A stretch of 64,000 nucleotides of DNA, from positions 124,001-188,000 of IMG/VR virus record IMGVR_UViG_3300044712_001462; one strand, given 5' to 3'. Position numbers and translations under genes: made by a program. Below the pieces are notes generated by a model, which was not told where the DNA came from, did no database searches, and was given only the letters and a program-made list of their open reading frames with translations. Shown piece by piece: positions 13,356-63,477 of this stretch (position 1 is the stretch's first letter; each line of letters begins with the position of its first letter).

Positions 13356-13397
13356 AAAAACAAAAACCCCGCTAACAACGTGAAGTCATTAGCGGGG
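13356..13397 (-). terminator. promoter-proximal intrinsic terminator
   Basis: CCCCGCTAA...TTAGCGGGG followed by TTTTTGTTTTT, about 35-75 nt after the predicted start site of promoter 13439-13467. Confidence 0.8.
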
Positions 13398-13438
13398 CTC
13401 GATACGAAGACTACATACTAAGAGGCTAGTCCTCGTGT

Positions 13439-13467
13439 ATTATGCCCGAAATCCGGCCTGAATTTAG
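13439..13467 (-). promoter_or_regulatory. phage promoter class A (CTAAATT-N16-CATAAT)
   Basis: Reverse complement CTAAATT CAGGCCGGATTTCGGG CATAAT. Confidence 0.75.
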
Positions 13468-13555
13468 GGTAGCAAGAGATACAGACATGCCGACAGTACG
13501 TCGGACAGAAAGCAGATCAACCCAATCCCCGCCGCAACGTGTAACAGCTTCATGA

Positions 13556-14137
13556 CTACCTCACAGTTGGAAGTTCCATACCCTGCCGATAATAACACCT
13601 CCGACCACCCCGCCACTCATTCCACGCCAAAATTGATCGAACCCGCATCGAGTGAGCTTTCTTCTTTGATACTGGCTCACCGTGCACAGAGAGCAGGTAC
13701 TTGCGCAGACGAGCTCTGGGATCACTCTGGTCATCCACGCCATCGCGGACTCCCTTCCAGAACTGCCGAGCCTGCTTGTGGTGTTTCTTGAAGGTGTCAA
13801 CCATGGTGCCGATCACCGGCGCTTTGCGAATATGACGCGCCCGACGCTTCAAGACGTCTGGATACAACATGTCATCCAGAAACTGCACCAGCCGATTCTC
13901 TCCCCGCAGCCGACGAGCCCGCTCGATAGGCGACGAACCATTGGGGAGTGCGCTGCGTTCGGAGTAGAGCTCCAGACCCATAACCGCGCGGTCAACCGCA
14001 GAGGCGCTGGCATCAATCCCGTAAAACTCAGCGCACTTCGAGTTCAACTGACTGGTTGTTACAGGGAGCTCCGCTAGCAGACCATGAACCATGTCAAGCA
14101 ATCCAGACTTCATTCCATCTCTCCTTAGTTGGGACAT
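13556..14137 (-). CDS. hypothetical protein resembling the C-terminal half of phage ParB-like proteins
   Basis: FWKGVRDG...DPRARLRKYL...ILAWNEWRGG resembles the C-terminus of 33456-34493. Start uncertain (14137 or 14116). Confidence 0.5.
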   Translation of the reverse strand: MSQLRRDGMKSGLLDMVHGLLAELPVTTSQLNSKCAEFYGIDASASAVDRAVMGLELYSERSALPNGSSPIERARRLRGENRLVQFLDDMLYPDVLKRRARHIRKAPVIGTMVDTFKKHHKQARQFWKGVRDGVDDQSDPRARLRKYLLSVHGEPVSKKKAHSMRVRSILAWNEWRGGRRCYYRQGMELPTVR

Positions 14138-14160
14138 AAAAGGTAACCAGGTGGTCACGT

Positions 14161-14189
14161 ATTATGCCGCTAGGGAGCCCGGAATTTAG
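14161..14189 (-). promoter_or_regulatory. phage promoter class A
   Basis: Reverse complement CTAAATT CCGGGCTCCCTAGCGG CATAAT; the -35-like box overlaps the upstream stop codon. Confidence 0.75.
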
Positions 14190-14713
14190 CTGGCGCGAGA
14201 GAGCTCATTCGCCTGCAACACACCCGTCTTCCTCGTTGCCACAGTAATGTGGAACTTGAACTCATTGTCTTTAGGAAGCGGCGTGAGCCCATAGCTTTTT
14301 CTTAGCTGTTGGAGCTCAGGCGAATTCACTTCAATAAACCAGACGCGAGAGATACCGGGCCACCCGGCCGGTTTAACCGACCGGAGTGGACCCAGTGTAT
14401 ACCTGAAGACCTGACCCCGTTCTTTGACTTTGTCAGGTCCGCCGATCTGGTCAAGATCTTCGGGCCGCAGCACAGAAATATGTGCATTGAACCCCGGCGG
14501 AAGTTCGGCTCCCGGTTCATGAAGCGCGGCGAACGCTCCACGTACAAGAGCGTTGGGGACTGATAGCAGGCCCCAACCGGACTGGGAGATGAACAATCGA
14601 CCTCCTAAGCTGTACGACAGCTCAGGCGTATCTGCCGCCCGTTTTACGGCGTACCTGCCGAGCAGTTCGGGCAACTGCAGATCGTAACTGTCTGTTATCG
14701 ATATCAGAGACAT
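14186..14713 (-). CDS. 2H phosphoesterase (LigT/Acb1-like superfamily)
   Basis: Two HxS/T motifs, AHISV and FHITV, about 76 aa apart in a 175-aa protein. Confidence 0.75.
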   Translation of the reverse strand: MSLISITDSYDLQLPELLGRYAVKRAADTPELSYSLGGRLFISQSGWGLLSVPNALVRGAFAALHEPGAELPPGFNAHISVLRPEDLDQIGGPDKVKERGQVFRYTLGPLRSVKPAGWPGISRVWFIEVNSPELQQLRKSYGLTPLPKDNEFKFHITVATRKTGVLQANELSRAS

Positions 14714-14716
14714 AAA

Positions 14717-14870
14717 GGGCCTCCCTGCCCGTTACGATCAACCAACTTCGCTGTCACAGAGATGCATGAGCATCTAACTGGTCTCGGTTTTACCACGCAG
14801 TCCCGTGTGCGCTACTTAAAGTCTGCATCCGTGCAGAGGGATCGATCTAAAACGGCTGTGAAAAGCATCT
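14717..14870 (-). ncRNA. candidate structured 5' leader of the 2H phosphoesterase
   Basis: Stems CCGTT/AACGG, GATCGA/TTGATC, TCTGCA/TGCAGA, GCGCA/TGCGT and AGATGC/GCATCT; a GGGC-AGGGAG-GCCC hairpin covers the SD. Confidence 0.45.
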
Positions 14871-14909
14871 ACTAAATAATGTAGCCAGGCTCTTCACATT
14901 AGCGCTAGG

Positions 14910-15887: not shown

Positions 15888-15958
15888 GAAGGAATTGAGC
15901 CACCAGCGCTAATATACCAATTCGCGCGCGCGGATCAACTAGCCTACAGGGGATAGCT

Positions 15959-15994
15959 AAAAAAAACCTGGCCCCCACGAATGTGAGGACCAGG
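15959..15994 (-). terminator. intrinsic terminator
   Basis: CCTGGTCCTCAC-ATTC-GTGGGGGCCAGG followed by U8. Confidence 0.85.
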
Positions 15995-16123
15995 CTTGTC
16001 ATAGATTCACTGCTCATACAAAGCAGCAAGTCGAATATAGCTCAGAAAAAGGAGCTGTCTAGTACTTGTCGGCGCACTCGCAACAAGTTAAACGCCACTC
16101 CGGCACGTAGTACTCCTCGAGCT

Positions 16124-17497
16124 CTAGATCACAGTCGCTACGACCACAACAGCTGCATCGTTCGGGTTCTCGGGCAGATTCAGGGTACTTTGTGGGCATT
16201 TGTCTGTCTCCAAAGGCTGGTGTCCGAGAATCAGACGCGCAGCATATTCCTTGTACTCATCCCAGTCACGCAATCGCTCCGAAGGTGTAATGAACACCAT
16301 ACAAGCGTCTTTCAGTGTTTGCAGCTCTGTCTCCAGATCCGAGACGCGTTGAGTCACGCCTTCCTTCATCGCCTCGTAGCACTCAACCTCTTCACGAAGC
16401 AGGTAGCACTGATCCGTCAGCTTAGAAATGCGGGCATTCGCACCTTTGAGAAGCTCATCCTGATGCGACACACCATCTCGCAGCTGGTCGATAACACGCT
16501 GGGCATGTGTCGCAGCCACAACATACTCGGCGTTGCGAAGCTGCAACCGCTCCTTATCAGCTTTAAGCTGATTATTCTCTTTACCCAGCTCACGGATGCG
16601 CTCAAGCATCTGCATTTTCGAAGCACCGATCGACATGATTATCTCCCAAAATCAGGTACTACGTCACCGGTCGGTTTTGATTTTGACGTGATTTCTACCT
16701 TGCCGCAAAGCGTACACTCTCGTGTCCAGGCTCTCCGGTACCGAGTAACCCAGTTTGTCTCATACCAGATGTCTGAACCCTGCCGAACGCAGTTGCCCAT
16801 TTCCGGAGACTGATAGGCCTCTTGAATAGCCTTAGGCTCACTAAATTGATGAGGACACGCCGCTTCGACTTTTTGAAGCTCATCCCGCAGCTGCTTCACT
16901 TCCAACTGCAGCTGTCTTAGATGTTCCCGTTTTTGCGATATACTCATGCCTCAGCTCCTGAAGTACAGAACACGAAGCATCTTCACCTCAGCCTTTTCAG
17001 CGGCTCCCTTGGTGAAGAATGCCCCGTGCTCGTCATAGGTCGTAACCCCTCCCATCCGCTCAGCAAACTCACCGAGCCAACGGATCACCCACGTAGGGCG
17101 TCCATCCACAAGCGGGCCTGGGTCGATATGCGAGACCCGCTCGATTTGGCCAAGCGCTCCGAGCTTACTGAGGAATGGCAGAAACTCATCGTGCCATTCG
17201 GCGGTAGTCCCGGACTCCCCGAATTTGATCATACATGATGTCATACTCGTCCTCGTTCTCCGCTTGGCGCAACTGCGCAAGCTCGCCTGCGAGCCGATCC
17301 ACAACCAGATCGAACTCTTCGTCGTCGAACTCCCTGTCATTCACAGTGATACAGGGATCGGAAATGTACTCTTCCATACAGGTGTGACACACAAACACCT
17401 GCCGACCATCAATACGCTCACCGGCCGACAGAATATCATGGGACTCGCCACAGTAGCAACATTCCTTCGTAGCCATTTTTGAACACCCTCTAAACAA
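16124..17497 (-). other. operon of small hypothetical genes (coiled-coil and zinc-finger proteins)
   Basis: Four or five coupled ORFs between promoter 17575 and terminator 15959. Confidence 0.6.
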
Positions 17498-17506
17498 GAG
17501 ATACCG

Positions 17507-17548
17507 AGAAAGAAAAAGAGGACACAGGTTTTACGCTGTATCCTCTTT
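17507..17548 (-). terminator. promoter-proximal intrinsic terminator
   Basis: AAAGAGGATACAG...CTGTGTCCTCTTT followed by TTCTTTCT, just downstream of promoter 17575-17603. Confidence 0.75.
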
Positions 17549-17574
17549 GGGCCGAGGGACTATTCGGTCCACGT

Positions 17575-17603
17575 ATTATGCCGCCATTTTCAACGAAATT
17601 TAG
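17575..17603 (-). promoter_or_regulatory. phage promoter class A
   Basis: Reverse complement CTAAATT TCGTTGAAAATGGCGG CATAAT. Confidence 0.75.
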
Positions 17604-18787
17604 GCAGCTTCAGCCGTCTCAGTCTCCTTGTCAGAGGGCTCCTCAGCCGGGACCGGGTCAGGTCGCAACACCTTTCTTCGGGTCGTCTCAGAAGACATAC
17701 CCATGATCGAGGTGAACAATTCATCCATGCGTCCCAATACGAACTCACGCTGCGTCCCATCTTTCCGCAAACGATTCGCTACCGTCGTAGCATCCTCGCC
17801 TACCCCTTTCAGAACGTTGTGGAGCTCTTCGAACTGGGCCCCAATCTGGCGACCATTCAAGATGCCAAACGGCTCAATCTTCGACTTGTACTCCTCAATC
17901 GCTTTGAAGACGCGCTCAATCACGCCATCCTTAAACGACTTTTGCGTACCATCCTGCCAGCCGCGGATCGAAGACACCATCTGCTGCAAACCCATCGCCA
18001 TCGCTTCTTCGATCAACTCCGCCTGCTTCTCAGCGACTTCGGTAAATTGCGCATTCAGTCGCGCCTGTTGTCGCCGGTATTCAGCCGGGTTCACCGCCTT
18101 CAAATACTCCGGCAACTCGAAGTTGTAGGTCTCAAAGCCCACGCCGATCTCCTGGTGGAGCCGTTCAGACGTCGGGTAATCCGACTCGTCATGCAACTCT
18201 CGGAGACGCTCCCGACACGTCGCCATGACTTCTGACCAGTTATTAGCCAGCTCATCAATAGCCTGCCGGAAGTCTGAGATCAGATCGTTGATCTCATCCA
18301 GGAACACACGCACTTCCTCATTCTGATCCTGTTCGGTCTCCCCGCGGACACCAAACAAGCGCACCCCATCTTCGGGGTACTTGAGGGTTTTCGATTGCCA
18401 GTACTTGATGAGCTTGGCCTTGGCCACCTGAACCGCGTGAATCGAAGGATGCTTCGCATACAACACTTTAGTAAAGCGGAGATGCGAGGGATCGCAGTCC
18501 ACGCTGCCAGCCAGCTTATGCGCTGCATCACCCTTAATCTTCCGGCTCTTACTCAGGTCATTGAACTTCAACCGGAAAGCTCGGGCGACTGCCTTAATGG
18601 TCTGCCCAGCTTCACGATAGCGCTCACGCTGTACCGCACGATCTTCTGCTGGAGGCAGATCCGCCAGCATCTTATCCACCTGCTCTTTGGTCAGGTGCTT
18701 CGTTGTCGTCTTCTTCTTTTTCTTCGACGACTTCTTCCCCACGTGCTGCTTAAGCTTCTGTAACAATTCAGGAGAGATACTTGCCAT
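17600..18787 (-). CDS. helical coiled-coil protein, DUF3150-like, partner of the AAA ATPase
   Basis: YWQSKTLKYPEDGVRLF...RERLRELHDESDYP motif; coupled to the ATPase through TAATG. Confidence 0.55.
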   Translation of the reverse strand: MASISPELLQKLKQHVGKKSSKKKKKTTTKHLTKEQVDKMLADLPPAEDRAVQRERYREAGQTIKAVARAFRLKFNDLSKSRKIKGDAAHKLAGSVDCDPSHLRFTKVLYAKHPSIHAVQVAKAKLIKYWQSKTLKYPEDGVRLFGVRGETEQDQNEEVRVFLDEINDLISDFRQAIDELANNWSEVMATCRERLRELHDESDYPTSERLHQEIGVGFETYNFELPEYLKAVNPAEYRRQQARLNAQFTEVAEKQAELIEEAMAMGLQQMVSSIRGWQDGTQKSFKDGVIERVFKAIEEYKSKIEPFGILNGRQIGAQFEELHNVLKGVGEDATTVANRLRKDGTQREFVLGRMDELFTSIMGMSSETTRRKVLRPDPVPAEEPSDKETETAEAA

Positions 18788-21700
18788 TAGTTAACATTGG
18801 GTCGAACTACCGACCGCCTCTTACCTCCGCCAGTGATGTCTGACACGCTGACCACTTGTTTCGCTCCTACATCGTAAAGCCCCGGAGCTGAGGCGTTCAA
18901 ACATCGTCCAGAGGCCCAGGCTCGCAGATCCTGCAGTTTGGTATCTGCCATTCGAGTGACAGGTACCACCTGCTTCGCAGCTTCGTCCAGAGAAACCTCA
19001 CGAATTGCCGCTAGGCGACAGCACGCCTTAATTTCAGCACCCGTCCAGCCCTCACTCAGCGTAAGGAGACTGTGCTTCACCTTGTCTGTCCGCGACTCCG
19101 CATGGCCATACAGATGCAAGTAGATCTGCCAAATAGCCAGGCGCTCTTCCTCTGTGGGAACATCCACAAAGAACACCGCATCAAAACGCTCCGCCCGAGA
19201 GAATTCTGGTGGGAGCATCGAGATGTTGTTGCAATTATGAACCACAACCCCAGACGCCATAAACGAGTGATGGGGCTCCTCAATAACCACATCGTAAACA
19301 GTCTGCTCACCAAGCGGAGAGGGTTCAACAGACACCACACTGACCCACTTCTGAGACCAAATACGTCGAACCTGCTCCAGCTCGTCTGCAATTTCGCGAG
19401 CCGCAGACTCGGACATCTTGGCAACATAGTGATCTACAATCACCTGCCACAACTCCGCCGTATCCGCCGATATTAGCGGAGTGTACTGCCTGTAGTTTGG
19501 CAACACCGATGTATAGCGACCAGCCGCTTTTAAAATAATCTCCAAACAATCATGCATTCCCGGAACACTCCGAACTCCATCTCCGTTAACCTCCTTAGGC
19601 CTACATATCCGACTTTTCTTGTCCGGGTGCTGAAACGGAATGAGCTGTGCAAACCGATGACAAGACTCCGAATCGCGGATACTCAGCTTAGTTACATCCT
19701 TGCGAGGAAGCTTTCGCGAAATCGTTGCAACAGAACCTTGAATATCAAATCTCGTTAAGAGAAGTCGAAGCTGGTCGATCATGACTGGGCTAGTTACCGC
19801 AATCTCAATTCGCCCACGTTTACTGATATAGCCCTCGGCGTCAAAAAGACCCGCTATAAAGGACAACACCACATCCTTGTCCGGAGATGCCATTACATCT
19901 TGAGGTATTTCTCGCACACATTGCAGGCATAAGATGTCTGGAAAATACTGCTCAAACCAATCTAACAGAAGACGACGATCCAGATAGATGTAGTACGACT
20001 GTGCTTTTGGACGCTTATCAATAACCTTTGGCTCTACTCCAAACAAACTACGAATCAGCGAGCATAGGTGCTGAGTCAGACCTGCGCTAAACTCAGATAA
20101 TTGAAGCCGATGGGCCTTCCTGTTTAAAAGCTTACCTTTACCCCCGTCCCCGCAGCAAAATCCAAGAAAATACGCCAATTCTGCTGTTAAGTACTCTGGT
20201 TGTTTAACAGGTTTCTGTCGGGATCGTGCTGGTAACGGCAGATACCGTTTTGCGGGTTTTGATCCCACTGGAGCTTTAGCTTTAGAAAGCAATAGATCAT
20301 CAGCAGTAAGATGCTTCGCTTCTTTCTCAGCTATTTTACCGTTTTGAAAGACAAAGAATCTGTGATCAGGCGTTGCATCGATGAACCCAGCTGACGTACG
20401 TATGCGTAGCATGTCGCGAATACCGCGGCTGTACACTAGCCCGGAGCCAGATACCCACTGACCAGTCTCGTCATCCACACTCAGGAACGTTTCACGTTGG
20501 CCTACAAGCGACTCAAGTTTACAGATACGCCCGTCCGCCAACTCAACAAGTGTTCCACCGGCCAAACACGTACCGATGAAAAACACATCTGACGTATGGT
20601 CGTTCAACCAACTGAGTAACTTACCAAAAATGCGATCACCAGAGCCGCCATCTGTCATCGATGATGACTGACCTGCTCCGGACAGTGCTTTCTCGATTTC
20701 CACTTGTGTTACGAGATACCCGTTTCCGGTACCTCTCTTACGGTTACCCGTAAGGTCAGACTATTTCATCCTGTCGCTGCGACAGGGCCCCCGTTTCGAG
20801 ATCACTTGATCTCTACTTCCTTTCGGAATAGTCGTTGAACGTTTCAGTCATAGACTGACTTCGCTGCAGATAATCCAGGCTAGTGGACTTCCCTGCAATT
20901 AGAGGGCTTTGCATCGGCATGTCACCACGCCGAGGGACTAACGTTAATCCACAAAGAGAATGCACGGCTGCATAGCATCAGCCAGCTTCAGAGCCATCCG
21001 GACATTGGCATCCGTTTCACCCTGAAACTTCGATCTGAGTGCGCCCATATCCATCATGAGCACTTTGCGCTGGGTCTCATTACCCATCGCCTTAATGATC
21101 GCACTCTTACCGGCACCAGGCACACCAAGGAGCAGCATACCACGAGGCTGAAGCAGAGGATTATCTCGTCGCCGAAGTAGCTGCTTCGAGAACTCCTTGA
21201 ATTGCTGCAACCCACCCAACTGCGCATAAGTGTCTGTGCCTTTGTAGATCTCCAGTACACCGCGCTTCTTGAGATCCTGAGCCTTCAGGTCCCAGATCTC
21301 ATTGGGATCGAGCTTACCGGTCTTCGCCAGAGACAAACTCAGAGCATCCTCGAAACCACGTCGAGACAATCCCGCCGCAGCATCTAAGACCAGTCGTTTG
21401 TCGTCATCCGTTTTAGGTAACTCCGTCTCCGCACAGATGTTCTTAGCGATCGACCAGAGTTGTTCCTTACCTGGCAGCTCGTGCTCCAGGATTACAAAGT
21501 CCTTCTCTAGCTCTCGAGGGATCTCAATCATCGGAGAGAGCACAATGGCGCAGCAGGAGACCTGGCCCTCCGCCTTACAATCCGTTACCGCGTTCTGCAG
21601 AGCCTGCATGATGGGTAGGTTGTGAACCAGCTGCTGGTGATGGAAATTCTTGAGAATCCAGATGACGTGAGTAGCACCCTCGCTACCCTGGGACTCTTGA

Positions 21701-21981
21701 GCCTGCCGAAGGGCCAGAGACATCACAGGCATGTCCTGAACCAACGGGAGAGGCTTCATCTGGTAGTTAGTATTCTTCGAAATGAAATCTCTTAGCGTCT
21801 CAGCTGTATCTCGGGGGCATTTGAGGCCCGCGGCGAAGTCCCACACAATGACCGGCCATTGTCTCTCAGCACATACCGGTACGATCTCTGCGATAGCATC
21901 CCCAAACTCATAAGTCTCAACCCAAAGGCCGGTGAAACCGGCTCGCAAATACTGCCGTACTTGCTCCCCAAGTGCTGGCAC
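18787..21981 (-). CDS. Ycf46-like AAA+ ATPase, join(21981-20947, 20700-18787); ~537 aa after intron and intein removal
   Basis: Walker A GVPGAGKS; Walker B ILFVD|EIEK restored by splicing; sensor-1 FIGT|CNNI restored by intein excision; arginine-finger region PPEFSRAERFD. Confidence 0.9.
19234..20568 (-). mobile_element. intein (445 aa) with LAGLIDADG homing endonuclease
   Basis: N-terminal CLAGGT, block B ATPDHRFF, LAGLIDADG motifs LAYFLGFCCGDG and FIAGLFDAEG, block F TVYDV, C-terminal VVHN followed by +1 Cys. Confidence 0.93.
20701..20946 (-). ncRNA. group I self-splicing intron (246 nt, no ORF)
   Basis: The 5' exon ends in U, paired U.G in P1 (GGAU/GUCC). Core elements P AATTGCAGGGAA, Q ATCTGCAGC, R GTTCAACGACTA, S GAAATAGTCT; terminal G. 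Removal fuses GAT|GAA in frame. Confidence 0.93.
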
Positions 21982-23447: not shown

Positions 23448-23729
23448 TTACACTTTGTATCCGCGTTTCCTCAATTCCGCGTCAGCATGTACCACGCTGC
23501 CAGGGATACTAGTAGAGCGCATGGGCTCAGGGCGCGTCGAGGTTGCCTCAAAAAAACACTGGAGAGCGCGCCTGCTCGTAAAAATCCGTCCACCTATGCG
23601 CAGAGTATCTAACAGAACCCCGCGATAACCGACGGTGGCCCAGCGCCAGACTGTCGAAGAAGATGTTTTCCCAGGTAACGCCTTCGCTGCCTCAGAGAGC
23701 GAAAGCACGTCTTCGTCGTCGAATTTCAA
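23448..23729 (-). CDS. DUF1580-like HTH protein, putative excisionase/recombination directionality factor
   Basis: LSLSEAAKALPG...STVWRWA..G.RGV.L.T.RIGGRIFTSR.AL..FF; overlaps the integrase stop. Confidence 0.75.
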   Translation of the reverse strand: MKFDDEDVLSLSEAAKALPGKTSSSTVWRWATVGYRGVLLDTLRIGGRIFTSRRALQCFFEATSTRPEPMRSTSIPGSVVHADAELRKRGYKV

Positions 23730-24919
23730 CCAAATTCCTCCGCAATTGATCGAGCCAGCTTCAAGTTCTTCTCCGCGTAGATTTCGCTGGTGCGAATATG
23801 CTTGTGCCCTAACAACACCTGGCTGCCTTCTACCCCGTACTTTTCACGTACGCGAGTAGCAAGGTTGTGCCGGAGCTGATTAGGAGCCCACGGAGTTACT
23901 CCTGCTGTGATACACGCTCGCTGAACTGCGCGCCGATAGGAATTGTGGTCATAGTGTGTCCCAGGTGATTTCACACGTCTTATCTTGCGGTTAGAGCCTG
24001 GTTTGTTACCGCACGATACGGGAGTAGTGCGCCGCTTATGTCGGGCGGCTAAACGCTGCTCTTCCGCCTCCCGCGGTGAAAAGCAGTATTCCAAGGGTGA
24101 TCGTTGCAAAAAGCGACGGAGTATTTTCTGCGCCCGTCGCCCTATCGAAATTTCCCTGCGAGCATCTTCCTGGTGTGCCAGCTTGTGATCAGGTGGCACG
24201 TAGAGCCACACGGGATCTTTCATGGAAATATCACACGGCCTGAGAAGACAGATCTCCATCGGCCTCATCCCTGTCCAGTACTGCAAACGAACCATCTGCG
24301 CCACCACTTTGGGCAGGTATGGAATCGTCTGTCTCAAGTCTTTCTCAGGCACCGGCAAAATCTTTTCGGTCTCCCTGGCCTTCGTCAGCCCTTTTCTTAA
24401 CCCTTCGAGGGTATTGAGATGAGCATGCGTATTCTTCTCTACCAGCCCAGCGCTCTCTGCCCACTTGAAGAGCCGCTTCACACAACCGATATACCGGTTC
24501 ACCGTGGAGCGCGAGAGCTTGCCTTCGCGGACTAACTGGGACTGGAGATCTCGGAGAGACCGAGCATCAAAGCGATCAGCTAACGTGTGCCCATAGTATT
24601 TGAGCAGCACATCGTTAGCCGCCTTGATTACCGCTACCTGGGAGGATAGCTTCCCCCTCTTAGACTGGTAACGGATATCCACGAACTCGTCCAGATAGCG
24701 CAGGACGAGGTGGTTGACGAACAGCGGTTGAGACCTCTCTTTGGCCACCACCGCGGACCCAGGATGCACCTGCCTCCCAGCGAGATGGTCGGCAATGAGC
24801 TGCGTACCCTGCGCCTCTGCAGAGCTCTTTTCCCGGCCTAAATAAATTCGCTTTCCAGCGATGTGAACGTAGAACTGACCGGTTGCGGCATGCAGACGAA
24901 CTTGGGGTTTGCGTGGCAT
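23726..24919 (-). CDS. int: tyrosine integrase
   Basis: Arm-binding N-terminus (RLHAATGQFYVHIAGKRIYLG); catalytic TGMRPMEI, NQLRH, LLGH and IYA. ATG at 24919. Confidence 0.92.
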   Translation of the reverse strand: MPRKPQVRLHAATGQFYVHIAGKRIYLGREKSSAEAQGTQLIADHLAGRQVHPGSAVVAKERSQPLFVNHLVLRYLDEFVDIRYQSKRGKLSSQVAVIKAANDVLLKYYGHTLADRFDARSLRDLQSQLVREGKLSRSTVNRYIGCVKRLFKWAESAGLVEKNTHAHLNTLEGLRKGLTKARETEKILPVPEKDLRQTIPYLPKVVAQMVRLQYWTGMRPMEICLLRPCDISMKDPVWLYVPPDHKLAHQEDARREISIGRRAQKILRRFLQRSPLEYCFSPREAEEQRLAARHKRRTTPVSCGNKPGSNRKIRRVKSPGTHYDHNSYRRAVQRACITAGVTPWAPNQLRHNLATRVREKYGVEGSQVLLGHKHIRTSEIYAEKNLKLARSIAEEFG

Positions 24920-24929
24920 GGCTGACCTT

Positions 24930-25207
24930 TTTAGTTGGTAGTCGACTACCAACTAAACTGTAAAGCAATCAGCAGGCCAGCCCTGGCTGTTTTCCTAAGT
25001 TCTTATGCTGTAAGGCTTTACTGAGTGGGCCGTGACAGACTCGAACTGTCGCCCTCTTGCATGTCAAGGAAAAACAGGCGAAATGAGGTCACTCGTAAAA
25101 ACGGCCCAAAACCTTTACAGATAAGCACTTAAGCGTCATTGCATACTTCGCAGCTGGCTTTACTTTTTGCCCATTTTTTCAGCGATAGTTGGTAGTTAGT
25201 TGGTAGT
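24930..25207. other. attP site: tRNA-derived core flanked by arm-type repeats
   Basis: TAGTTGGTAGT at 24932-24942, inverted at 24945-24955, and tandem direct at 25186-25196 and 25197-25207; the core at 25026-25068 lies between them. Confidence 0.8.
25026..25068 (-). pseudogene. 3' half of tRNA-Val(GAC), attP core
   Basis: Reverse complement C-TTGACAT-GCAAG-AGGGC-GACAG TTCGAGT CTGTC-ACGGCCC-A gives the anticodon loop, T-arm and acceptor 3' strand; the 5' half is absent. Confidence 0.85.
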
Positions 25208-34493: not shown

Positions 34494-35576
34494 AGACCGG
34501 CCTTTCTTTACTGTTTGACCTCACCATCCAGCAGCATTACACCATCGTAATGCGCTTTCTGGATCTTCTCGACCAGATACTCCCACACGTCGTCCCACGC
34601 CTCTTCTTCGCAATCACCAATCCCCACAGCTGTCACTGTGAACTCGTATGCCGCCATCACACACTCCTATACTTATCTCGCAACTCGCAGTAGAGCCGCT
34701 CGATCCCTTCGTCCGCCTCAATCCACATCGTTTCATACGGTGCAATGACTTTCTCCGCCGCTTCAATGACTCGCTCCGCAGTCTCTTTCACCGTATCCGC
34801 CCAGGGAACAGACACAGTCTCACTGAAGAAAAGACACCAGTCATCGCCGGTCCACTCACCAGAGCATCCCACATCACAAACCACGCTAAGCGCTAACATG
34901 GAATAACTAGATTTGTCCTCTGCGGTTAAGTCCCATTCACACTCATATGTCGGGTCAACCAGTGTTTTGTGGCCCGATACCCGTACGGTAACAGTCTCGT
35001 CGTTAGCCCCCAGAATCGAATCAATCCCCGTGCAACCTGTCGGCTCCAGGTCCGCATCCTTCCAGCCAAAACTGATTAGATCGAAACACCCAGACAAGCA
35101 CCGCCCGTCGTCGTCATAGCGCTTCAGATTGCGGCCTTCATTCATCTCTCGAAGGGTTATTCGTAACTCATCGATCGCGGCAGCAAGTTCGACCTCCTCC
35201 TGTTCACGGCAATACCAATCCCAGTCTTCGCTAGGACATCTCGCCATTTACTCCTCCTCATCCTCTTCTTCCTGCGCCGGTCTGCGGTTTGCCACGTCTT
35301 CAAACGTGCGCCCATCCGAGTCCTCCCCGCCAAAAAAGCAATAATCAAAGACATGCTCGAGGGCTGCATAAGTCTGGGGGTCCAGCTCCGTCGCATCCTC
35401 GTATTCCTCGAAATACGTGTTTACCAGCAGAACAAAAGCATCGGTAAGCTCCTGTTCTTTGAAGTGGTGCTGTATGGATTGCACCAAACAGTTAAATCTC
35501 GCAACTGGATCTTCTTTCATACCCGTCGCTCCTTTGGCTAGACATTCAGACAGAAATGGCAACAAAGAGAACTCTC

Positions 35577-35590
35577 TAATAGCGATATCA
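35577..35590. promoter_or_regulatory. operator-like motif inside a leader hairpin
   Basis: TAATAGCGATATCA just downstream of promoter 35602; embedded in the inverted repeat at 35571-35596. Confidence 0.55.
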
Positions 35591-35601
35591 GAGAGTCACA
35601 T

Positions 35602-35630
35602 ATTATGACGCAGAAGTGTCGAGAATTAAG
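35602..35630 (-). promoter_or_regulatory. phage promoter class A (CTTAATT-N16-CATAAT)
   Basis: Reverse complement CTTAATT CTCGACACTTCTGCGT CATAAT. Confidence 0.7.
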
Positions 35631-35633: not shown

Positions 35634-35863
35634 CAGGCTGGATAGCACCACTGCCACCGCGTGTAGCAGTTCCGAAGCCGATCGGTTTGGGCCAAGGACG
35701 CCGCCTCGCTACGACTTGAAGCCCCGGGTTACCCCGCATTCCTGGCGCTATCCGAGACGGCCTTGCAGGCGCGAGGAGCCGTCTTACCCACATAGCCGCA
35801 CACATGCCAATGCGGTCTACCGGGTTACAGATGTTGTCCAAATCTAAGCCTGCCGACAACACC
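35634..35863 (-). ncRNA. candidate structured ncRNA (~230 nt), family not recognised
   Basis: At least eight nested helices; three helices contain G.U pairs that would be A.C on the plus strand; GUAA tetraloop. Confidence 0.6.
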
Positions 35864-37215: not shown

Positions 37216-38220
37216 CTAACAGATAGCATTCAACCAAGCTTCCACATGATCTTCTGGCCTGTGTTTATCCGCAGCCCCAGGCCTTACAGCAGGTAAGGGT
37301 CCGCGCATAGCTGCACTAAGCTCAGCCACACTACCCAAGGACGTTACTATCAGTCCGGGTGTGTCTGGTGCTTCCAGAGCCGCGCTACCTACATCCGAGA
37401 CAATTACCGGACGTCTACGAGCCAAGGCTTCGGCAATGGTTAAGTCATACCCCTGTCCATAAGCTGTCGGTACCACTAAGGCGTCCACTCCGTCATACAC
37501 AGCAGGCATATCCCGACGTTTGACATTCGAGATTGTGGATAACCTCACGCCAGCCAACTGTGCTGCTTCGGCTGCTGTCTCAAATAACCGAGTTCCCTGT
37601 CCCGAAATAGAAGCGCACAGAAAAGTATCCTGACGCTTAACAGGAGCCGTCGGAGAACGGAAAAAGTACCCAGGAATCGGGTTGTAAACCAACTTAGCCT
37701 GGGGAAGACACATGTAGTGCCTGAGCATCTGATACTCGTGACGACTGATCCCTAGCACCGTATCAAAAGTAGCTAGAGCCTTACGTTCCCGAAGCATACC
37801 AGGCGCATCAAACCGGGGCTCCTCGCTCGTCTTACCTAGCCAGTACAGATTCCACTGGGTCAGAAACGATCCCCAGCCAAAACCGTGTAACGTACAGGCG
37901 GTTGTCGTATTCGGTAAGTCAGCCCACCAGGTCCTGTGTACATCTAGGGAGTCGCAATGCACGACGTCAGGCCTGATTCGCTCACAGAATGCGCGGCATC
38001 CTTCTGCAAACTCTGTCGAATAGACATGCGGCTCACAGTCAAGATGGTGAACAACCAGGTTAGTTACCTGTGTTACTGCCTGTAATGTTGGATGTCCGGT
38101 AGTTAAAACAAATACCGTATGTCCGGCGGCAGCCAGCGCTTCCGCTCTGTCCTGAACCACAAACGGCATCCCACCACTACGATGTGTAGGATATACCCGA
38201 CAGACAAGTATGATCTTCAT
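37216..38220 (-). CDS. glycosyltransferase family 4 (GT-B)
   Basis: MKIILV..YP...GG...LAAAGHTV.VLT; C-terminal VVPT..QGYDLTIAEALA..RPVIVSDVG. Confidence 0.85.
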   Translation of the reverse strand: MKIILVCRVYPTHRSGGMPFVVQDRAEALAAAGHTVFVLTTGHPTLQAVTQVTNLVVHHLDCEPHVYSTEFAEGCRAFCERIRPDVVHCDSLDVHRTWWADLPNTTTACTLHGFGWGSFLTQWNLYWLGKTSEEPRFDAPGMLRERKALATFDTVLGISRHEYQMLRHYMCLPQAKLVYNPIPGYFFRSPTAPVKRQDTFLCASISGQGTRLFETAAEAAQLAGVRLSTISNVKRRDMPAVYDGVDALVVPTAYGQGYDLTIAEALARRRPVIVSDVGSAALEAPDTPGLIVTSLGSVAELSAAMRGPLPAVRPGAADKHRPEDHVEAWLNAIC

Positions 38221-53817: not shown

Positions 53818-53825
53818 CAAAGTCC

Positions 53826-58460: not shown

Positions 58461-58477
58461 ATCTCACTCCTTGCCCA

Positions 58478-58520: not shown

Positions 58521-58548
58521 CGCAACGACAATCAGACACTACGCGGAC

Positions 58549-59502: not shown

Positions 59503-59925
59503 CAGTTGATTAACTGTTCCCAGGCTAGCGCAGAAAGGATTTCGCCGTCAACAGAAGATTGAGATAGCGGTATTAGGGACCACCGCTGAAACAACTGAGG
59601 TCGCGCCAGTCATCGACTCCCCAGGGGGCCTCGGAGTCGTAATATCGGCCGTTGTAGCGAACAAAGCAGTGATAGGCATAATCATCCGTATCTTCGTTCA
59701 CCCCGGTCAGCTCGTCTCCCCAGAACGCCTCCGCCCCGGGTACCAAGCCACAAACCTCCTCAGCAAACCACTCGCAGTCTCCAAAGTTGACACCTGCCGC
59801 AGAGCTGTCAAACAGCTCTTTCCAGAGCTTCACTAAAACATCGATCGCCTCGGTTATCGTCCACGACCTCTCTTTTAAAGCATCAATGCGCTGACGAAAT
59901 GTCAGATAATCGTCGGACACAGTAG

Positions 59926-60498: not shown

Positions 60499-61184
60499 TC
60501 AACAACCTCCTCACAGGCCTCTTCTTCGGCCCTTGTAAATTCAGGACTCCACCAACACTCGCCCGGACACGCGGCGATACTAATTCCCGTGTCAACACTC
60601 CCTATCTCAGGAGAATCATCACAACCGCACTGTGTGATCGATCCGTTTGTGCGCACAACCCATTCCGTACAGGCGCACATCCAAGACTCGCGGTCAGCAG
60701 GCTCATCCAATAAGACGTAACCTCTCCCAGCCGGTAGTGGCTCTTGTGTGCCACCCTTAGTAACATCACGGATCGCATCGATCTTTGTAAAGGCATCCAC
60801 CACATCCAGATCGATCGGGTCGTGATACTGATCTTGAGACAGATAGCCGTCGATTACCTTCGCTTTAGTCAGCTGAGCGATCAGAAGAGCCCTGCGCTTG
60901 ATAGAGCCGTTTGTCACGATAAACACAGGATTACCCGTATCCGCAGCGGCAGCCATAGCCTCCACCAGCATCAACTCAAACTGCGGATGTAGCGTAGGCT
61001 CCCCGCCTCCTAGGCAGATGAAGCTGTCGTACTCCGTGGCAATCTCCAGACCTTTTCGGAAAACATCAAGCGACATGTCACTGCCATTGGCTGTTGCAGA
61101 CATACAGCAGTGGGCACAAGACATGTTGCAGCGAGTTGTGAGTTCTAGGTACGTGGGTCGTCCTCCGGACCTGTTACTATCCAC
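60495..61184 (-). CDS. radical SAM protein
   Basis: ELTTRCNMSCAHC (CxxxCxxC), GGGEPTLHP, VTNGS; Cys-rich C-terminus. Confidence 0.85.
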   Translation of the reverse strand: MDSNRSGGRPTYLELTTRCNMSCAHCCMSATANGSDMSLDVFRKGLEIATEYDSFICLGGGEPTLHPQFELMLVEAMAAAADTGNPVFIVTNGSIKRRALLIAQLTKAKVIDGYLSQDQYHDPIDLDVVDAFTKIDAIRDVTKGGTQEPLPAGRGYVLLDEPADRESWMCACTEWVVRTNGSITQCGCDDSPEIGSVDTGISIAACPGECWWSPEFTRAEEEACEEVVE

Positions 61185-61442
61185 GTTCCACCGTCGTGAC
61201 GGATCATTTGTGGATACGGCAACAGCGTCTCTAGGAATCTCTCAAACTGACCTGTCAGCCATTTGTCGTTAGGCCATTCGTCTAACTCACCATCATGCCT
61301 GTGTCCTGCAATACCCGCCACAAACCGACGCAGGTCACCCTTACCAATGTCTAAATAAACACACGCATCATCCGCAGCATACAGATATTCCAAGTACATA
61401 TTTATCGCTACTCGTAAAGCCATAACAGCCTTGTCGGTGACT

Positions 61443-62038
61443 TTATCCCGCGTCATAATCATCCTCCTCGTCATCCTCAATGCCCAGATCGTCGTTGTAG
61501 AGCCATAGCCAGGCTTGGACCCAGGTGCCATCGTCCGCCTCACTAGTACCGGCATCATCATCGACTTCAATCTCGTTTCCATCCCGATAATGACCGTACA
61601 CCTCTTGGGCCGTCTTAACCTCGTGAGGTGTAGCTTGCTGGAACGGTCTGACCTCACGGACTTTCACACCTGGAAATGTTTTAATCATGTCAGCAATGGC
61701 ATCCGCTTCCTGCTGGGTACAACCCTCGATCCAGATCTTATGGCTCACAGGCTTTCATCCTCCTCCGCATATTCAAGACCCATCTCTTCATTGCTCACCC
61801 AGGTCCAGGCCTGCACCCAAACGCCTTCGTCGGATTGGATGGTTCCCGCATCGTCTTCAATCTTCAGATCATAAGCGTCGGCAGCTTCACTCTCGCGGGC
61901 TGCCTTTATATACCGTGGTGTAGCCAGCTGAAACTCTACCGGGTCGTGTACTATGACCCCCGGCATGGACCTCATCGCACTTACAATCCCGTGCGCATCC
62001 TCTTTCGTGCAACCTTCAATCCAGATCTTGTAACTCAC
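61443..62038 (-). repeat. two tandem paralogous acidic genes (61443-61748 and 61745-62038)
   Basis: Both read MS(H/Y)KIWIEGCT...PGV.V....FQ.ATP...DDAGT...D.G.WVQAW.W..N...G.E. Confidence 0.85.
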
Positions 62039-63412
62039 AGGTATCCCTCCACTAACTTTGTCTTACCCAGAACCTTGTCCTGCTGCACTAAGACATCGCA
62101 TAGAGACAATTGACCGGCCAACCAATCCCGGCCAGGCATCTCCGCCGCTGTCACTGCCACATGTCGCAACTCCTCATACAGCGCCTTGTAATCAGGCGGA
62201 GGAACTGGTTTCGCCTGTCTCTCCTCCTCGACGTACTCCATAAACTCCTCAAAAGCTTCGTCCTCATCCCAGTCGTGCTCACTAAAGGGAAAAATCCGCT
62301 GAATAAAGTCTCGCAGATTCGGCAGGGCACAGTTTACCCCGTTTCGCAAATCATCCAGGTCGTCCTGGAAATCCAGGAGATCAGCAACAGCCTGCTCCAA
62401 CAATTTCTTTAACTGAGCTTCAGACAACGCCATTCTATTACGCCCTTTCTTTATGCCCACACAACTGACACTGGATATATGCATTGGTTCCATTAAACAC
62501 CACCAGAGGCATGTCATTTCGGCCTAGTCGCCAAACATGCTTACATGGCGGCCCCTTTGACTCTTGTCCAAGATCAATACCACGAGCCATAGCCAGTCGG
62601 TACTGCTCCGTCAGCCACTCGGCAAACTCTCTCGATCGAATGTCCGTAGGTACCGGACAGCCCTGCTCGTTCAAATACCTGAAAACCGCATCCACCTTAT
62701 ACCAGTCCGTGACAAACTCCCAAGTGTTCTTACCGTCGATCATTTCCACCTCACTTCTCTGCCAGGCAATCACCATTAGTGTTATACGGGTCAAAAGCAC
62801 ACGAGCACTTACAGACAATCGCGCAATCAAAACAAGTAATGCGAAGGTCACATTCCGCGTTTCAATGCTTCAAGGCCTGTTCTGCCCGGTTAGCCCGTGC
62901 GATTAAGCTCTTAATTCTGTCATCCACGGTAGCCGCTGCTTCGTTGGCCATTTTTCGTTATTACCCTTTCGTGAACAGTCATCTTCCCGGTCTTCGTGAC
63001 ATAGACCTGAACCTCTCCGCGGGGTGATTTCAAGCGAATCACCACCCAGCCCTTCTTCTCGTCGGAGCACATGCGAGATACGTCGACAGCGCCGTACTCA
63101 AAGCCGTACTGAGTCTCTTGGTAGTGCATGCTCAAGTCTCACTCGCCTGCTCATAGCCTCGCGAATACAACTCTTCTTTTCCACGGTGATGGCATTCCGC
63201 CCACAGAATATCCACATGCGTGTGATAGTCGCTTCTTGGGTTGTTTGCCGCAAAAGCACTCAGCCAGATCTTCTGTTCGCACTCCTCAACAATCTGCTCG
63301 TCAGTCATCTGAGCCACCTTTTCAATGTACTCTGCCCACGGCTTACCGTAATTGTCTTTGCCCTCAAACCGACTGGCATACTCTCTCGTCTCTACCATTG
63401 GTTAGCTCCCGT

Positions 63413-63443
63413 AAAAAAAAAACGAACACTAAACCTGCCTCGT
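63413..63443 (-). terminator. promoter-proximal terminator-like hairpin
   Basis: ACGAGGCA...TGTTCGT followed by a long U-tract, directly after promoter 63449. Confidence 0.55.
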
Positions 63444-63448
63444 CAAAG

Positions 63449-63477
63449 ATTATGACACGAAAAGTGCCAAAATTGAG
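63449..63477 (-). promoter_or_regulatory. phage promoter class A (CTCAATT-N16-CATAAT)
   Basis: Reverse complement CTCAATT TTGGCACTTTTCGTGT CATAAT. Confidence 0.7.

What the first reader, a model, noticed from the sequence alone, without database searches (positions are those of the whole stretch)
13356..63477. Promoters fire straight into terminators: candidate genome-wide attenuation/antitermination regulon or sRNA set
Seen: four of the six class A promoters are followed within about 80 nt, before any ORF, by a hairpin plus U-rich tract (13356-13397, 17507-17548, 35561-35596, 63413-63443). Only weak hairpins follow the other two. The promoters at 35602 and 63449 each head about 10 kb of genes. 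Known: lambdoid N/Q and P4-type immunity control phage operons through premature termination. Inference: early operons are kept silent by leader termination, giving 30-80 nt RNAs in the lysogen, and are released together by one antiterminator. Such a distributed switch would suit a large temperate genome.
Basis: partly seen in the sequence, partly recalled or inferred. Interest (0 to 1): 0.72.

Follow-up and report, generated by a model that had tools for sequence, protein, structure and literature searches.

The report
Phage promoter–terminator boundary cassettes
A repeated promoter of an uncultured giant phage is real, but only two of its six copies here run straight into a true terminator, and the pattern looks more like the promoter-plus-terminator cassettes that large phages use to fence off small swappable genes than like a genome-wide lysogeny switch.

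Summary
The window is part of a 224.5-kb metagenomic jumbo phage that carries its own multisubunit RNA polymerase. Nearly all its genes lie on the minus strand. The six "class A" promoters (TAAATT-N16-CATAAT, minus strand) are real: 6 matches against 0.12 expected, and 9 in the genome, all on the coding strand and all intergenic. Only two of the four claimed leader terminators hold up. Those at 13400-13356 and 17548-17507 are strong hairpins with U tracts. The hairpin at 35597-35570 is one copy of an unrelated palindrome found about 12 times, and its U tract is poor. At 63443-63413 there is a U10 run but no stable hairpin, and the real terminator lies upstream of that promoter. Across the genome a terminator follows the promoter at 3 sites (strict count) and precedes it at 3, and no strict leader terminator co-occurs with an upstream one. 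The promoter→terminator→gene order at 17575 is kept in three diverged relatives with different stem sequences, so it is selected. I found no N, Q or NusG homologue, no shared nut-like box and no repressor. The best reading is composite promoter–terminator boundary elements, like the PeSLs of T4-type phages. In some of them the terminator sits in the leader and attenuates the promoter's own transcripts. Whether read-through is regulated cannot be told from sequence.

The parts
63449..63476 (-). Class A promoter (TCAATT-N16-CATAAT). It heads an 88-aa gene whose ATG is at 63398.
   Evidence: conserved in relatives L032 and L033
63490..63524 (-). Intrinsic terminator of the upstream 1590-aa gene. 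It lies UPSTREAM of the promoter (terminator→promoter order).
   Evidence: -20 to -21 kcal/mol, tail UCUGUUUUCG; an equivalent terminator sits in the same place in L032 and L033
63413..63422 (-). U10 run in the 44-nt leader, just before the Shine-Dalgarno sequence. It is not preceded by a stable hairpin.
   Evidence: -3.1 kcal/mol, z -1.0; relatives have only a U5 run and no hairpin
35602..35629 (-). Class A promoter (TTAATT-N16-CATAAT).
35570..35597 (-). Hairpin at about +2 to +27 of the transcript. It is a copy of the genome-wide quasi-palindrome 'motif P' (core TATCGCTA) and has a poor U tract. Doubtful as a terminator.
35636..35679 (-). Hairpin whose T-rich tail overlaps the -35 element. 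Candidate upstream terminator for this intergenic region.
   Evidence: -16.4 kcal/mol, tail TGTTTCTTAATT
17575..17602 (-). Class A promoter. The TAA of its -35 hexamer is the stop codon of the upstream 395-aa gene.
   Evidence: orthologous promoters in L017/L018, L020 and L023
17507..17548 (-). Strong intrinsic terminator in the leader (stem from about +21, U5CU3). The 96-aa gene starts 30 nt after the U tract (ATG at 17476).
   Evidence: relatives have a hairpin plus U tract in the same place with different stem sequences
14161..14188 (-). Class A promoter. Its TAA is the stop codon of the upstream 175-aa (2H-SAK family) gene. No terminator on either side; 41-nt leader to a 185-aa orphan gene.
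13439..13466 (-). Class A promoter.
13356..13400 (-). Strong intrinsic terminator in the leader (16-bp stem from about +33, U5GU5). It is followed after 16 nt by the start of a 41-aa lipoprotein gene.
   Evidence: in the strain of run X3 the stem is unchanged while the loop, flanks and U tract vary
13214..13339 (-). 41-aa ORF with a lipobox (LLAGC). It can only be expressed by read-through of the 13400-13356 terminator.
12918..12945 (-). Class A promoter variant (-10 hexamer CACAAT) heading a 70-aa gene.
12964..12986 (-). Intrinsic terminator (U8) immediately UPSTREAM of the 12918 promoter (terminator→promoter order).

Best explanation
Class A sites are promoters specific to this phage clade, with sigma-70-type geometry: -10 CATAAT, invariant G at -14, and a non-canonical -35 box CTAAATT. 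They mark the boundaries of small, mostly orphan gene cassettes in the variable early-type region of a jumbo phage. Each boundary usually also carries one intrinsic terminator. Together they form a composite promoter–terminator element comparable to the PeSLs of T4-type phages.

The terminator can sit on either side of the promoter. When the promoter is fused to the upstream stop codon, the terminator ends up downstream of the start site (13439 and 17575 here, 196180 outside the window). There it does two jobs. It ends transcription coming from the upstream gene. It also prematurely ends most transcripts from the class A promoter, so the downstream genes receive only the read-through fraction. 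That is attenuation, with 60-110-nt RNAs as by-products.

Shown: the motifs, the folds, their order, their conservation, and the lack of room for another promoter. Inferred: that the sites are active promoters and terminators, that termination is partial, and that read-through is constitutive rather than switched.
For: - The motif is far above chance, strand-specific and intergenic.
- Seven of nine promoters share their intergenic region with a terminator-like hairpin. By the strict count 3 are promoter→terminator (5 by the loose count) and 3 are terminator→promoter. No site has a strict terminator on both sides; only 35602 has loose-criterion hairpins on both.
- At 14161, 17575 and 196180 (and at 35602 if its doubtful 84-aa ORF is real) the upstream gene's stop codon is the TAA of the -35 box. 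At 17575 and 196180 no other terminator serves that gene. The stems start 52-88 nt after that stop codon.
- After the U tract only 16 nt (13439) and 30 nt (17575) remain before the start codon, so the downstream genes need read-through. The 96-aa gene has an orthologue in L020.
- The promoter→terminator→gene order at 17575 is conserved in three lineages (58-75% protein identity). The stems differ in sequence but all fold (-23 to -30 kcal/mol; the most diverged, L017, is marginal against shuffles, z -1.8) and all carry a U tract. The terminator→promoter order at 63449 is likewise conserved.
- Cassette behaviour. Relative L017 lacks about 12 kb of this region but has its own class A promoter and small-gene units. 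The 185-aa gene between two promoters has no homologue among 5.8 billion proteins. In the strain of run X3 the block from leader through terminator to lipoprotein gene sits between different flanks, with one junction inside the -10 hexamer. In L033 an 83-aa gene occupies the place of our 112-nt hairpin RNA behind the same promoter.
- Precedents. PeSLs are composite promoter plus stem-loop elements that start at the upstream stop codon, vary in stem-loop position, flank orphan genes and act as recombination points (PMC2839356, PMC4122927). In phage LUZ7 more than 60% of terminators are under 50% efficient (PMC9163698).
Against: - There are no transcript data. No RNA run was listed.
- The host, and which polymerase reads class A promoters, are unknown. 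The phage encodes its own beta-beta' enzyme.
- The predicted terminators look strong, so constitutive leakage might be too low to express conserved downstream genes. That would favour a regulated mechanism.
- In PeSLs the stem-loop lies at or before the start site, so it does not terminate the element's own transcripts. Here it lies at +21 to +60.
- The absence of a strict terminator on both sides rests on only about 13 sites (expected doubles about 2).
- In X3 the terminator travels with the downstream gene rather than the upstream one.
Confidence: 0.45

Rival explanations
1. Leader terminators keep class A operons silent (for example in a lysogen), and one phage antiterminator of lambda N/Q or P4 type releases them together.
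For: - Two window promoters and one outside fire into strong terminators placed before the first ORF.
- The order is conserved at 17575.
- The only element shared by all sites is the promoter itself, which is where a Q-like factor would load.
- The phage has a tyrosine recombinase.
- Most phage genes are orphans, so an unrecognisable antiterminator cannot be excluded.
Against: - Only 3 of 9 promoters qualify, and the two long units (35602, 63449) lack real leader terminators.
- No box of 12 nt or more is shared among the leaders, so nothing like nut or put was found.
- The promoter spacers are not conserved apart from an A/T-rich centre, so there is no Q-binding-element-like sequence.
- Pfam models for NusG, Phage_antitermQ and Antiterm give no match.
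- No HTH_3 or S24 repressor was found.
- No prophage relative was found in species genomes.
- There is no evidence that the phage lysogenises.
Confidence: 0.12
2. A polymerase-selective gate. The hairpin and U-tract signals stop one polymerase (host RNAP) but not the other (the phage's own beta-beta' enzyme), or the reverse. A promoter placed before a terminator would then be productive only for the terminator-blind enzyme. This resembles T7 class II promoters lying upstream of the early terminator TE (recalled from established knowledge, not checked here).
For: - The phage encodes a multisubunit RNAP: a 1911-aa beta-beta'N fusion with the NADFDGD motif at residue 1818, followed by a likely beta'C gene.
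- Class A has a non-canonical -35 box.
- Canonical TTGACA-type promoters are not enriched.
- All but one of the nine class A sites lie upstream of the RNAP gene in the direction of transcription.
Against: - The -10 CATAAT, the G at -14 and the 16-bp spacer are classic sigma-70-family geometry, so host RNAP is the simplest reader. Host RNAP obeys such terminators.
- Nothing is known of the promoter or terminator specificity of this RNAP clade (PMC7481178).
- Three class A promoters have the terminator upstream, so there is no gate at those sites.
Confidence: 0.13
3. The short transcripts are the product. Promoter plus terminator units are small-RNA genes, most plausibly the 112-nt two-hairpin RNA at genome 196173-196060.
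For: - The predicted RNAs are highly structured (z -4.8 to -6.7).
- At 196180 the terminator is followed by a separate conserved T-run plus AGCTAT element about 45 nt before the next gene. That element could be the gene's own start signal.
Against: - At 13439 and 17575 the next gene starts 16-30 nt after the U tract and has no promoter of its own.
- Complementarity to the phage's own transcripts is no better than for shuffled RNAs: 10-12 nt against 10-16 nt.
- No Rfam family matches.
- The 196180 RNA is not conserved in L033, which has a gene there instead.
- Between lineages only the structure of the 17575 leader terminator is kept, not its sequence.
- Host targets could not be tested.
Confidence: 0.12
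4. Evolutionary debris. Promoter-next-to-terminator pairs are empty cassettes left after loss of the gene that once lay between a cassette's promoter and its terminator, and have no function of their own.
For: - At 196180, relative L033 has an 83-aa zinc-ribbon gene between the same promoter and the T-run element, where our genome has 112 nt of non-coding hairpins.
- The region is highly variable.
Against: - The 17575 arrangement is conserved in three lineages with remodelled but intact stems.
- In X3 the 13400-13364 stem has no change while the loop, flanks and U tract vary.
Confidence: 0.08

Closest known systems
PeSLs (promoter-early stem-loops) of T4-type phages RB49/phi1, PST and nt-1 (Arbiol et al. 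2010, PMC2839356; Comeau et al. 2014, PMC4122927)
   Same: - A repeated early-type promoter is coupled to a stable stem-loop that works as a terminator or attenuator.
- The element begins at the upstream gene's stop codon and ends at the next gene's Shine-Dalgarno sequence.
- The stem-loop position relative to the promoter varies between copies.
- Copies are concentrated among small orphan genes in variable regions.
- Copies coincide with insertion, deletion and replacement junctions between close relatives.
   Different: - PeSL stem-loops lie upstream of, within, or just before the start site, so they stop only upstream transcription. Here three stem-loops lie at +21 to +60 and must also stop the promoter's own transcripts.
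- The -35 box is CTAAATT, not the sigma-70 consensus.
- The phage is unrelated to T4 and has its own RNAP.
- Recombination and mini-circle formation were not shown here.
Lambda late control: PR' promoter, tR' terminator (6S RNA) and antiterminator Q; phage 82 and 21 equivalents (recalled from established knowledge)
   Same: A constitutive promoter fires into an intrinsic terminator that precedes the genes, producing a short RNA.
   Different: - Lambda has one such unit heading the whole late operon, with a Q-binding element in the promoter and a sigma-dependent pause.
- Here there are several short units, no Q homologue and no conserved spacer element.
- The long operons lack the terminator.
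Lambda N/nut and HK022 put RNA antitermination (recalled from established knowledge)
   Same: A promoter-proximal RNA hairpin precedes terminators.
   Different: Those systems use a hairpin or box of conserved sequence at each site. The 5' hairpins and leaders here share no common sequence.
Leaky intrinsic terminators that tune expression in phage operons (LUZ7, T7), Putzeys et al. 2022, PMC9163698
   Same: Intrinsic terminators inside transcription units, with downstream genes expressed by read-through. Read-through may change with time.
   Different: In those phages the terminators mostly follow genes. Here they sit in the untranslated leader directly behind the promoter.
P4-type immunity (CI RNA causing premature termination; recalled from established knowledge)
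   Same: Early transcription ends prematurely close to the promoter.
   Different: P4 needs an RNA that pairs with repeated target sequences in the nascent transcript. No such repeated or complementary sequences were found.

Membership tests
Intrinsic (Rho-independent) terminator | Stable G+C-rich stem-loop in the RNA | tested here: met
   13400-13364 (leader -28.8 kcal/mol, z -4.8) and 17548-17515 (-23.0, z -5.75) meet it. 35597-35570 is moderate (-13.6). 63443-63423 fails (-3.1, z -1.0).
Intrinsic (Rho-independent) terminator | Run of U directly after the stem | tested here: met
   U5GU5 at 13366-13356 and U5CU3 at 17514-17507. The tract at 35569-35557 is poor (UCUCUUUGUUGCC). There is a U10 at 63422-63413, but without a stem.
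Intrinsic (Rho-independent) terminator | RNA 3' ends at the U tract in vivo or in vitro | not testable with these tools
   No RNA sequencing run was listed for this phage.
Sigma-70-type promoter | Two hexamers 16-18 bp apart with a TATAAT-like -10 (A at position 2, T at position 6) | tested here: met
   CATAAT or CACAAT at a fixed 16-bp spacing, with G at -14 invariant.
Sigma-70-type promoter | -35 hexamer resembling TTGACA | tested here: not met
   The -35 box is (C)TAAATT, matching 2 of 6 consensus positions. Consensus-type promoters are not enriched in the genome.
Lambda-type processive antitermination (N/nut, Q/qut, put) | An antiterminator protein or its cofactor homologue encoded by the phage | tested here: not met
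   Pfam NusG, Phage_antitermQ and Antiterm give no match in the genome. N-type proteins are too small and diverse to exclude, and most genes are orphans.
Lambda-type processive antitermination (N/nut, Q/qut, put) | A conserved cis element (nut/put RNA or promoter-embedded binding site) shared by all controlled units | tested here: not met
   The leaders share no word of 12 nt or more. The promoter spacers are not conserved beyond an A/T-rich centre. Only the promoter boxes themselves are shared.
Lambda-type processive antitermination (N/nut, Q/qut, put) | A terminator between the promoter and the controlled genes | tested here: inconclusive
   Met at 13439, 17575 and genome 196180. Not met at 12918, 14161, 35602 (doubtful), 63449, 201955 and 38021.
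PeSL-type composite promoter–terminator cassette | A repeated early promoter motif with an adjacent stem-loop, between the upstream stop codon and the downstream Shine-Dalgarno sequence | tested here: met
   Seven of nine promoters have a stem-loop in the same intergenic region. The stop codon lies inside or next to the -35 box at 14161, 17575, 196180 and 38021, and at 35602 and 13439 if doubtful short ORFs count.
PeSL-type composite promoter–terminator cassette | Stem-loop placed at or upstream of the start site, so that only upstream transcription is stopped | tested here: not met
   At 13439, 17575 and 196180 the terminator stem begins at about +33, +21 and +60. At 12918, 35602 and 63449 it is upstream, as in PeSLs.
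PeSL-type composite promoter–terminator cassette | Association with variable regions and orphan genes, and with junctions of indels between relatives | tested here: met
   L017 lacks about 12 kb here and carries other class A units. The 185-aa gene is a singleton. The X3 strain has a junction inside the -10 hexamer of 13439. L033 and our genome differ in cassette content behind the same promoter. The sample is small.
PeSL-type composite promoter–terminator cassette | Phage belongs to the T4-type myoviruses | tested here: not met
   No near DNA match to known phages. The large proteins are mostly without PHROG families. The phage has its own beta/beta' RNAP, as in the metagenomic RNAP-encoding clade of PMC7481178.
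Known cis-regulatory RNA (riboswitch, T-box, leader) | Match to a curated RNA family | tested here: not met
   An Rfam gathering-score scan of the window and four other 20-kb stretches (L001, L002, L010, L011) found only a tRNA and a group I intron.

The most novel reading that the evidence does not exclude
In a jumbo phage with its own multisubunit RNA polymerase, host-type intrinsic terminators placed just behind a phage-specific promoter class act as polymerase- or factor-selective gates. Transcripts started at class A promoters, or made by one of the two polymerases, pass through. All other transcription is stopped. The result would be a distributed temporal switch without any lambda-like antiterminator.
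Probability: 0.12. Interest if true: 0.75.

Novelty: new variant of a known kind. Interest (0 to 1): 0.38.

Why it matters
Nothing is known about how the metagenomic, RNAP-encoding jumbo phages organise transcription. This analysis provides three things. First, a well-supported promoter class. Second, a set of strong terminators. Third, one leader terminator (17548-17507) whose position is conserved across three lineages, which makes a concrete testable case of attenuation. If read-through proves to be switched by a phage factor or by the phage polymerase, it would be a new way of timing genes in a two-polymerase infection. If not, it extends the PeSL idea of composite promoter–terminator cassettes as units of gene shuffling from T4-type phages to an unrelated giant phage lineage.

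Tried and rejected
- Known phages: a near-identity search found nothing.
- Exact scans for the class A motif returned only scattered single hits in unrelated, mostly AT-rich contigs. This held for IMG/VR, JGI metagenomes and GTDB genomes. None encodes a relative of this phage, so they are chance matches that tell nothing about host or spread.
- Relatives through the RNAP: IMG/VR gave only 29-33% identical phages without the motif. GTDB genomes gave none.
- The 185-aa gene flanked by two promoters has no homologue, so the 13439 and 14161 sites have no orthologue to compare.
- No RNA sequencing run was listed. The one read-laying run was therefore spent on DNA metagenomes for strain variation.
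- The Rfam scan found no leader family.
- Pfam searches of the genome for T7-type RNAP, sigma-70 region 2, NusG, two Q families, MotA, AsiA, HTH_3 and S24 were all negative. Sigma region 4 gave only sub-threshold hits.
- Consensus TTGACA/TATAAT promoters are not enriched (9 intergenic on the coding strand, 8 on the other). I therefore dropped the idea of a second, canonical early promoter class.
- Genes behind the promoters gave no informative Pfam match.
- The short RNAs show no target complementarity in the phage above shuffled controls.
- I considered counting the 38021 hairpin as a fourth leader terminator. I rejected it because it has no U tract in either our genome or orthologue L081 (L081 instead has a weak 5' hairpin followed after 8 nt by a U7 run). 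It is part of a conserved structured leader of about 190 nt.
- I considered the T-run plus AGCTAT element as a second promoter class. Its distance to start codons (12-95 nt) is too variable to settle this.

Full report
**What the window is.** It is bases 124001-188000 of a single 224,528-bp virus record. CheckV rates the record complete and IMG/VR classes its ends as linear. It was assembled from a rhizosphere metagenome, and partial relatives occur in rhizosphere, activated-sludge and groundwater runs. G+C is 52.8%. A codon-model gene call gives 306 genes, 298 of them on the minus strand, so every feature of the finding has to be read on the minus strand. Known phages give no near match, and most large proteins have no PHROG or Pfam family. 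The phage encodes a multisubunit RNA polymerase. One 1911-aa ORF (genome 116475-122210) matches both Rpb2 domain 6 (E 5e-51) and Rpb1 domain 2 (E 1.5e-20), with NADFDGD at residue 1818. The next large gene is co-conserved with it in distant relatives. This places the phage near the metagenomic RNAP-encoding Caudovirales of PMC7481178, for which no transcription signals are described.

**The promoters are real.** TAAATT-N16-CATAAT with at most one mismatch occurs six times in the window, all on the minus strand, against 0.12 expected. A position matrix finds nine sites in the genome, all on the minus strand, with no hit scoring between the nine sites and the cut-off of 8 on the coding strand. 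The extended consensus is cCTAAATT, a spacer with an A/T-rich centre, then G-n-CATAATA-y-r-T-G. The -10 hexamer, the invariant G at -14 and the fixed 16-bp spacing are sigma-70-family geometry. The -35 box is not TTGACA, and consensus-type promoters are not enriched in the genome. Related contigs carry the same motif at orthologous and non-orthologous places: L017/L018, L020, L023, L032, L033 and L081.

**The four claimed leader terminators.**

| Promoter | Leader folded (minus strand) | ΔG (kcal/mol) | z | U tract | Verdict |
|---|---|---|---|---|---|
| 13439 | 13432-13356 | -28.8 | -4.8 | U5GU5 after a 16-bp stem | Real terminator shape |
| 17575 | 17568-17507 | -23.0 | -5.75 | U5CU3 | Real terminator shape |
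| 35602 | 35597-35555 | -13.6 | -3.95 | poor | Doubtful |
| 63449 | 63443-63413 | -3.1 | -1.0 | U10 | No hairpin; not a terminator |

- In both real cases only 16 and 30 nt separate the U tract from the next start codon. The downstream genes therefore have no room for a promoter of their own.
- The 35602 hairpin is a copy of a quasi-palindrome (core TATCGCTA). That motif occurs about 12 times in intergenic DNA in both orientations, and in most copies it ends 4-13 nt before a start codon. It is a different element.
- At 63449 the U10 run sits just before the Shine-Dalgarno sequence. The true terminator of that region (63524-63490) lies upstream of the promoter. Relatives L032 and L033 keep exactly this terminator→promoter→U-rich-leader order.
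The two confirmed sites head about 0.4 kb and 1.5 kb up to the next strong terminators.

**Genome-wide picture.**
- Terminator downstream of the promoter: 13439, 17575 and genome 196180 (two hairpins, U9, 112 nt, -47 kcal/mol).
- Terminator upstream of the promoter: 12918, 63449 and probably 35602.
- Neither: 14161 and 201955.
- Genome 38021: a strong hairpin but no U tract. Orthologue L081 shows it belongs to a conserved structured leader of about 190 nt, not a terminator.
- No site has a strict terminator on both sides; only 35602 has loose-criterion hairpins on both.
- A terminator within 140 nt downstream is found at 7.5-11% of random intergenic positions. The enrichment is therefore significant by the loose count (5 of 9, P about 2e-4 to 1e-3) and borderline by the strict count (3 of 9, P 0.03-0.07).
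- Promoters and terminators co-occur at unit boundaries in either order, about equally often.

**Stop codons.** At 14161, 17575 and 196180 the upstream gene's stop codon is the TAA inside the -35 box. The same holds at 35602 and 13439 only if doubtful short ORFs are counted, and at 38021 the stop lies one base before the box. In the downstream-terminator cases the terminator is the only one available to the upstream gene. At 17575 and 196180 it begins 52-88 nt after that gene's stop codon, a normal distance.

**Conservation.**
- After the 395-aa gene, four relatives in two further lineages (58-75% protein identity) keep the same order: stop codon in the -35 box, promoter, small 5' hairpin, terminator, then gene.
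- The terminator stems differ in sequence. All fold, though L017 only marginally against shuffles (z -1.8), and all carry a U tract: L023 -30.2 kcal/mol (z -7.3), L017 -25.5 kcal/mol.
- This is the strongest evidence that a terminator in the leader is selected for and not an accident.
- In the strain of run X3 the 13400-13364 stem has no change, while the loop, the flanks and the U tract do change.

**Cassette behaviour.**
- L017 lacks about 12 kb of our window between the 2H-SAK gene and the RNAP module, but has four class A promoters of its own in front of unrelated small genes.
- The 185-aa gene between promoters 14161 and 13439 is a singleton among 5.8 billion proteins.
- In X3 the block 13219-13443 (leader, terminator, 41-aa lipoprotein gene) sits between unrelated flanks, with one junction inside the -10 hexamer.
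- Behind the orthologue of promoter 196180, L033 has an 83-aa zinc-ribbon gene where our genome has only the 112-nt hairpin RNA.
- This matches the PeSLs of T4-type phages. Those are composite early-promoter and stem-loop elements that begin at the upstream stop codon. Their stem-loop sits in one of five positions relative to the promoter. They flank orphan genes and mediate modular shuffling (PMC2839356, PMC4122927).
- The difference is that PeSL stem-loops lie at or before the start site, whereas three of ours lie at +21 to +60.

**Tests of the antitermination model.**
- No match in the genome for NusG, Phage_antitermQ or Antiterm, for sigma-70 region 2 or T7-type RNAP, or for MotA or AsiA.
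- No HTH_3 or S24 repressor. The only lysogeny-type gene seen is a tyrosine recombinase (window 23726-24952).
- No prophage relative in 185,579 species genomes.
- The nine leaders share no word of 12 nt or more, so there is no common nut- or put-like RNA.
- No Rfam family matches.
- The short RNAs have no complementarity to phage transcripts above shuffled controls.
- These negatives are weak for small, fast-evolving proteins, because most genes here are orphans.

**Conclusion.** The promoter class is real and new. The claim that promoters fire straight into terminators is true for two window sites and one outside, and it is conserved at one of them. The most economical reading is composite promoter–terminator boundary elements, in which a leader-placed terminator both ends the upstream unit and attenuates the class A transcripts. 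Downstream genes would live on read-through, as is usual for leaky phage terminators (PMC9163698). A regulated release, whether by an unrecognised factor or by the phage's own polymerase, is not excluded. It is the interesting minority reading. A genome-wide lysogeny switch is not supported.

Noticed in passing
G000:C1:116475-122210 (minus strand; L006/L007), next gene 112644-114542: A single 1911-aa ORF joins an RNAP beta homologue (Rpb2_6, E 5e-51) to the N-terminal part of beta' (Rpb1_2, with NADFDGD at residue 1818). The following 632-aa gene is co-conserved with it in distant relatives L030 and L031 and is probably the rest of beta'. No sigma factor was detected.
   Followed up: partly
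window 20737-20956 (minus), with ORFs 20944-21981 and 18787-20703: A group I intron (Rfam RF00028, 71 bits) interrupts an AAA+ ATPase gene. The downstream exon also carries an intein with a LAGLIDADG domain. Relatives L018 and L020 have an uninterrupted 526-528-aa ATPase.
   Followed up: partly
window 23432, 35587, 48074, 53814; genome 26650, 38513, 100236, 109590, 195402, 211024, 218143: 'Motif P' is a quasi-palindrome of about 22 bp (ctCTGTGTTATCGCTATTAGAGag) with about 12 intergenic copies in both orientations. Its purine-rich 3' arm usually ends 4-13 nt before a start codon and looks like the Shine-Dalgarno sequence. It is a candidate operator for a dimeric regulator, or a translational-operator hairpin.
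   Followed up: partly
window 2097, 12958, 15960; genome 37881, 196064, 200175; L017:2050, 5930, 6440; L032:7055; L033:2285, 11210: A run of 8-10 T followed by AGCTAT (variants ACCTAT, AACTAT, ACTTAT) recurs right after terminators. In L032 and L033 it also occurs without a preceding hairpin. It is conserved at orthologous places and heads the operon containing tRNA-Thr and the RNAP gene. Its function is unknown; it could be a second start signal or a downstream element of terminators.
   Followed up: partly
G000:C1:37850-38014 (L002:17850-18014, minus) and L081:126-304: A leader of about 190 nt behind class A promoter 38021 is conserved in sequence and structure in a relative whose downstream protein is only 53% identical. 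It folds at -43 to -53 kcal/mol and matches no Rfam family. It is a candidate new cis-regulatory RNA in front of a 140-185-aa protein family with about 100 cluster representatives in the protein library.
   Followed up: partly
window 13214-13339 (minus): A 41-aa ORF with a lipoprotein signal (lipobox LLAGC) lies directly behind the leader terminator. In the strain of run X3 the block 13219-13443 lies between different flanking sequences, so it behaves as a mobile cassette.
   Followed up: partly
window 1983-2054 (minus): tRNA-Thr (anticodon TGT), the only tRNA in the genome. It lies 35 nt after a T9-AGCTAT element and a TACAAT box.
   Followed up: no
L017:3900-3950: Four tandem copies of a 10-11-nt unit (ATGGCTCATA-like) lie directly upstream of a class A promoter in the relative. 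They could be a binding array for a regulator.
   Followed up: no
window 14125-14135 and G000:C1:37985-37995 (minus): The leaders of promoters 14161 and 38021 share the 11-mer TTTATGTCCCA at about +20 to +30. The chance of such a match among all leader pairs is about 0.09, and it is not conserved in L081.
   Followed up: no
window 23726-24952 (minus): A tyrosine recombinase (Phage_integrase, E 5e-15; PHROG 1) is the only lysogeny-type gene seen. No CI-type repressor domain was found in the genome, so whether the phage is temperate is open.
   Followed up: partly
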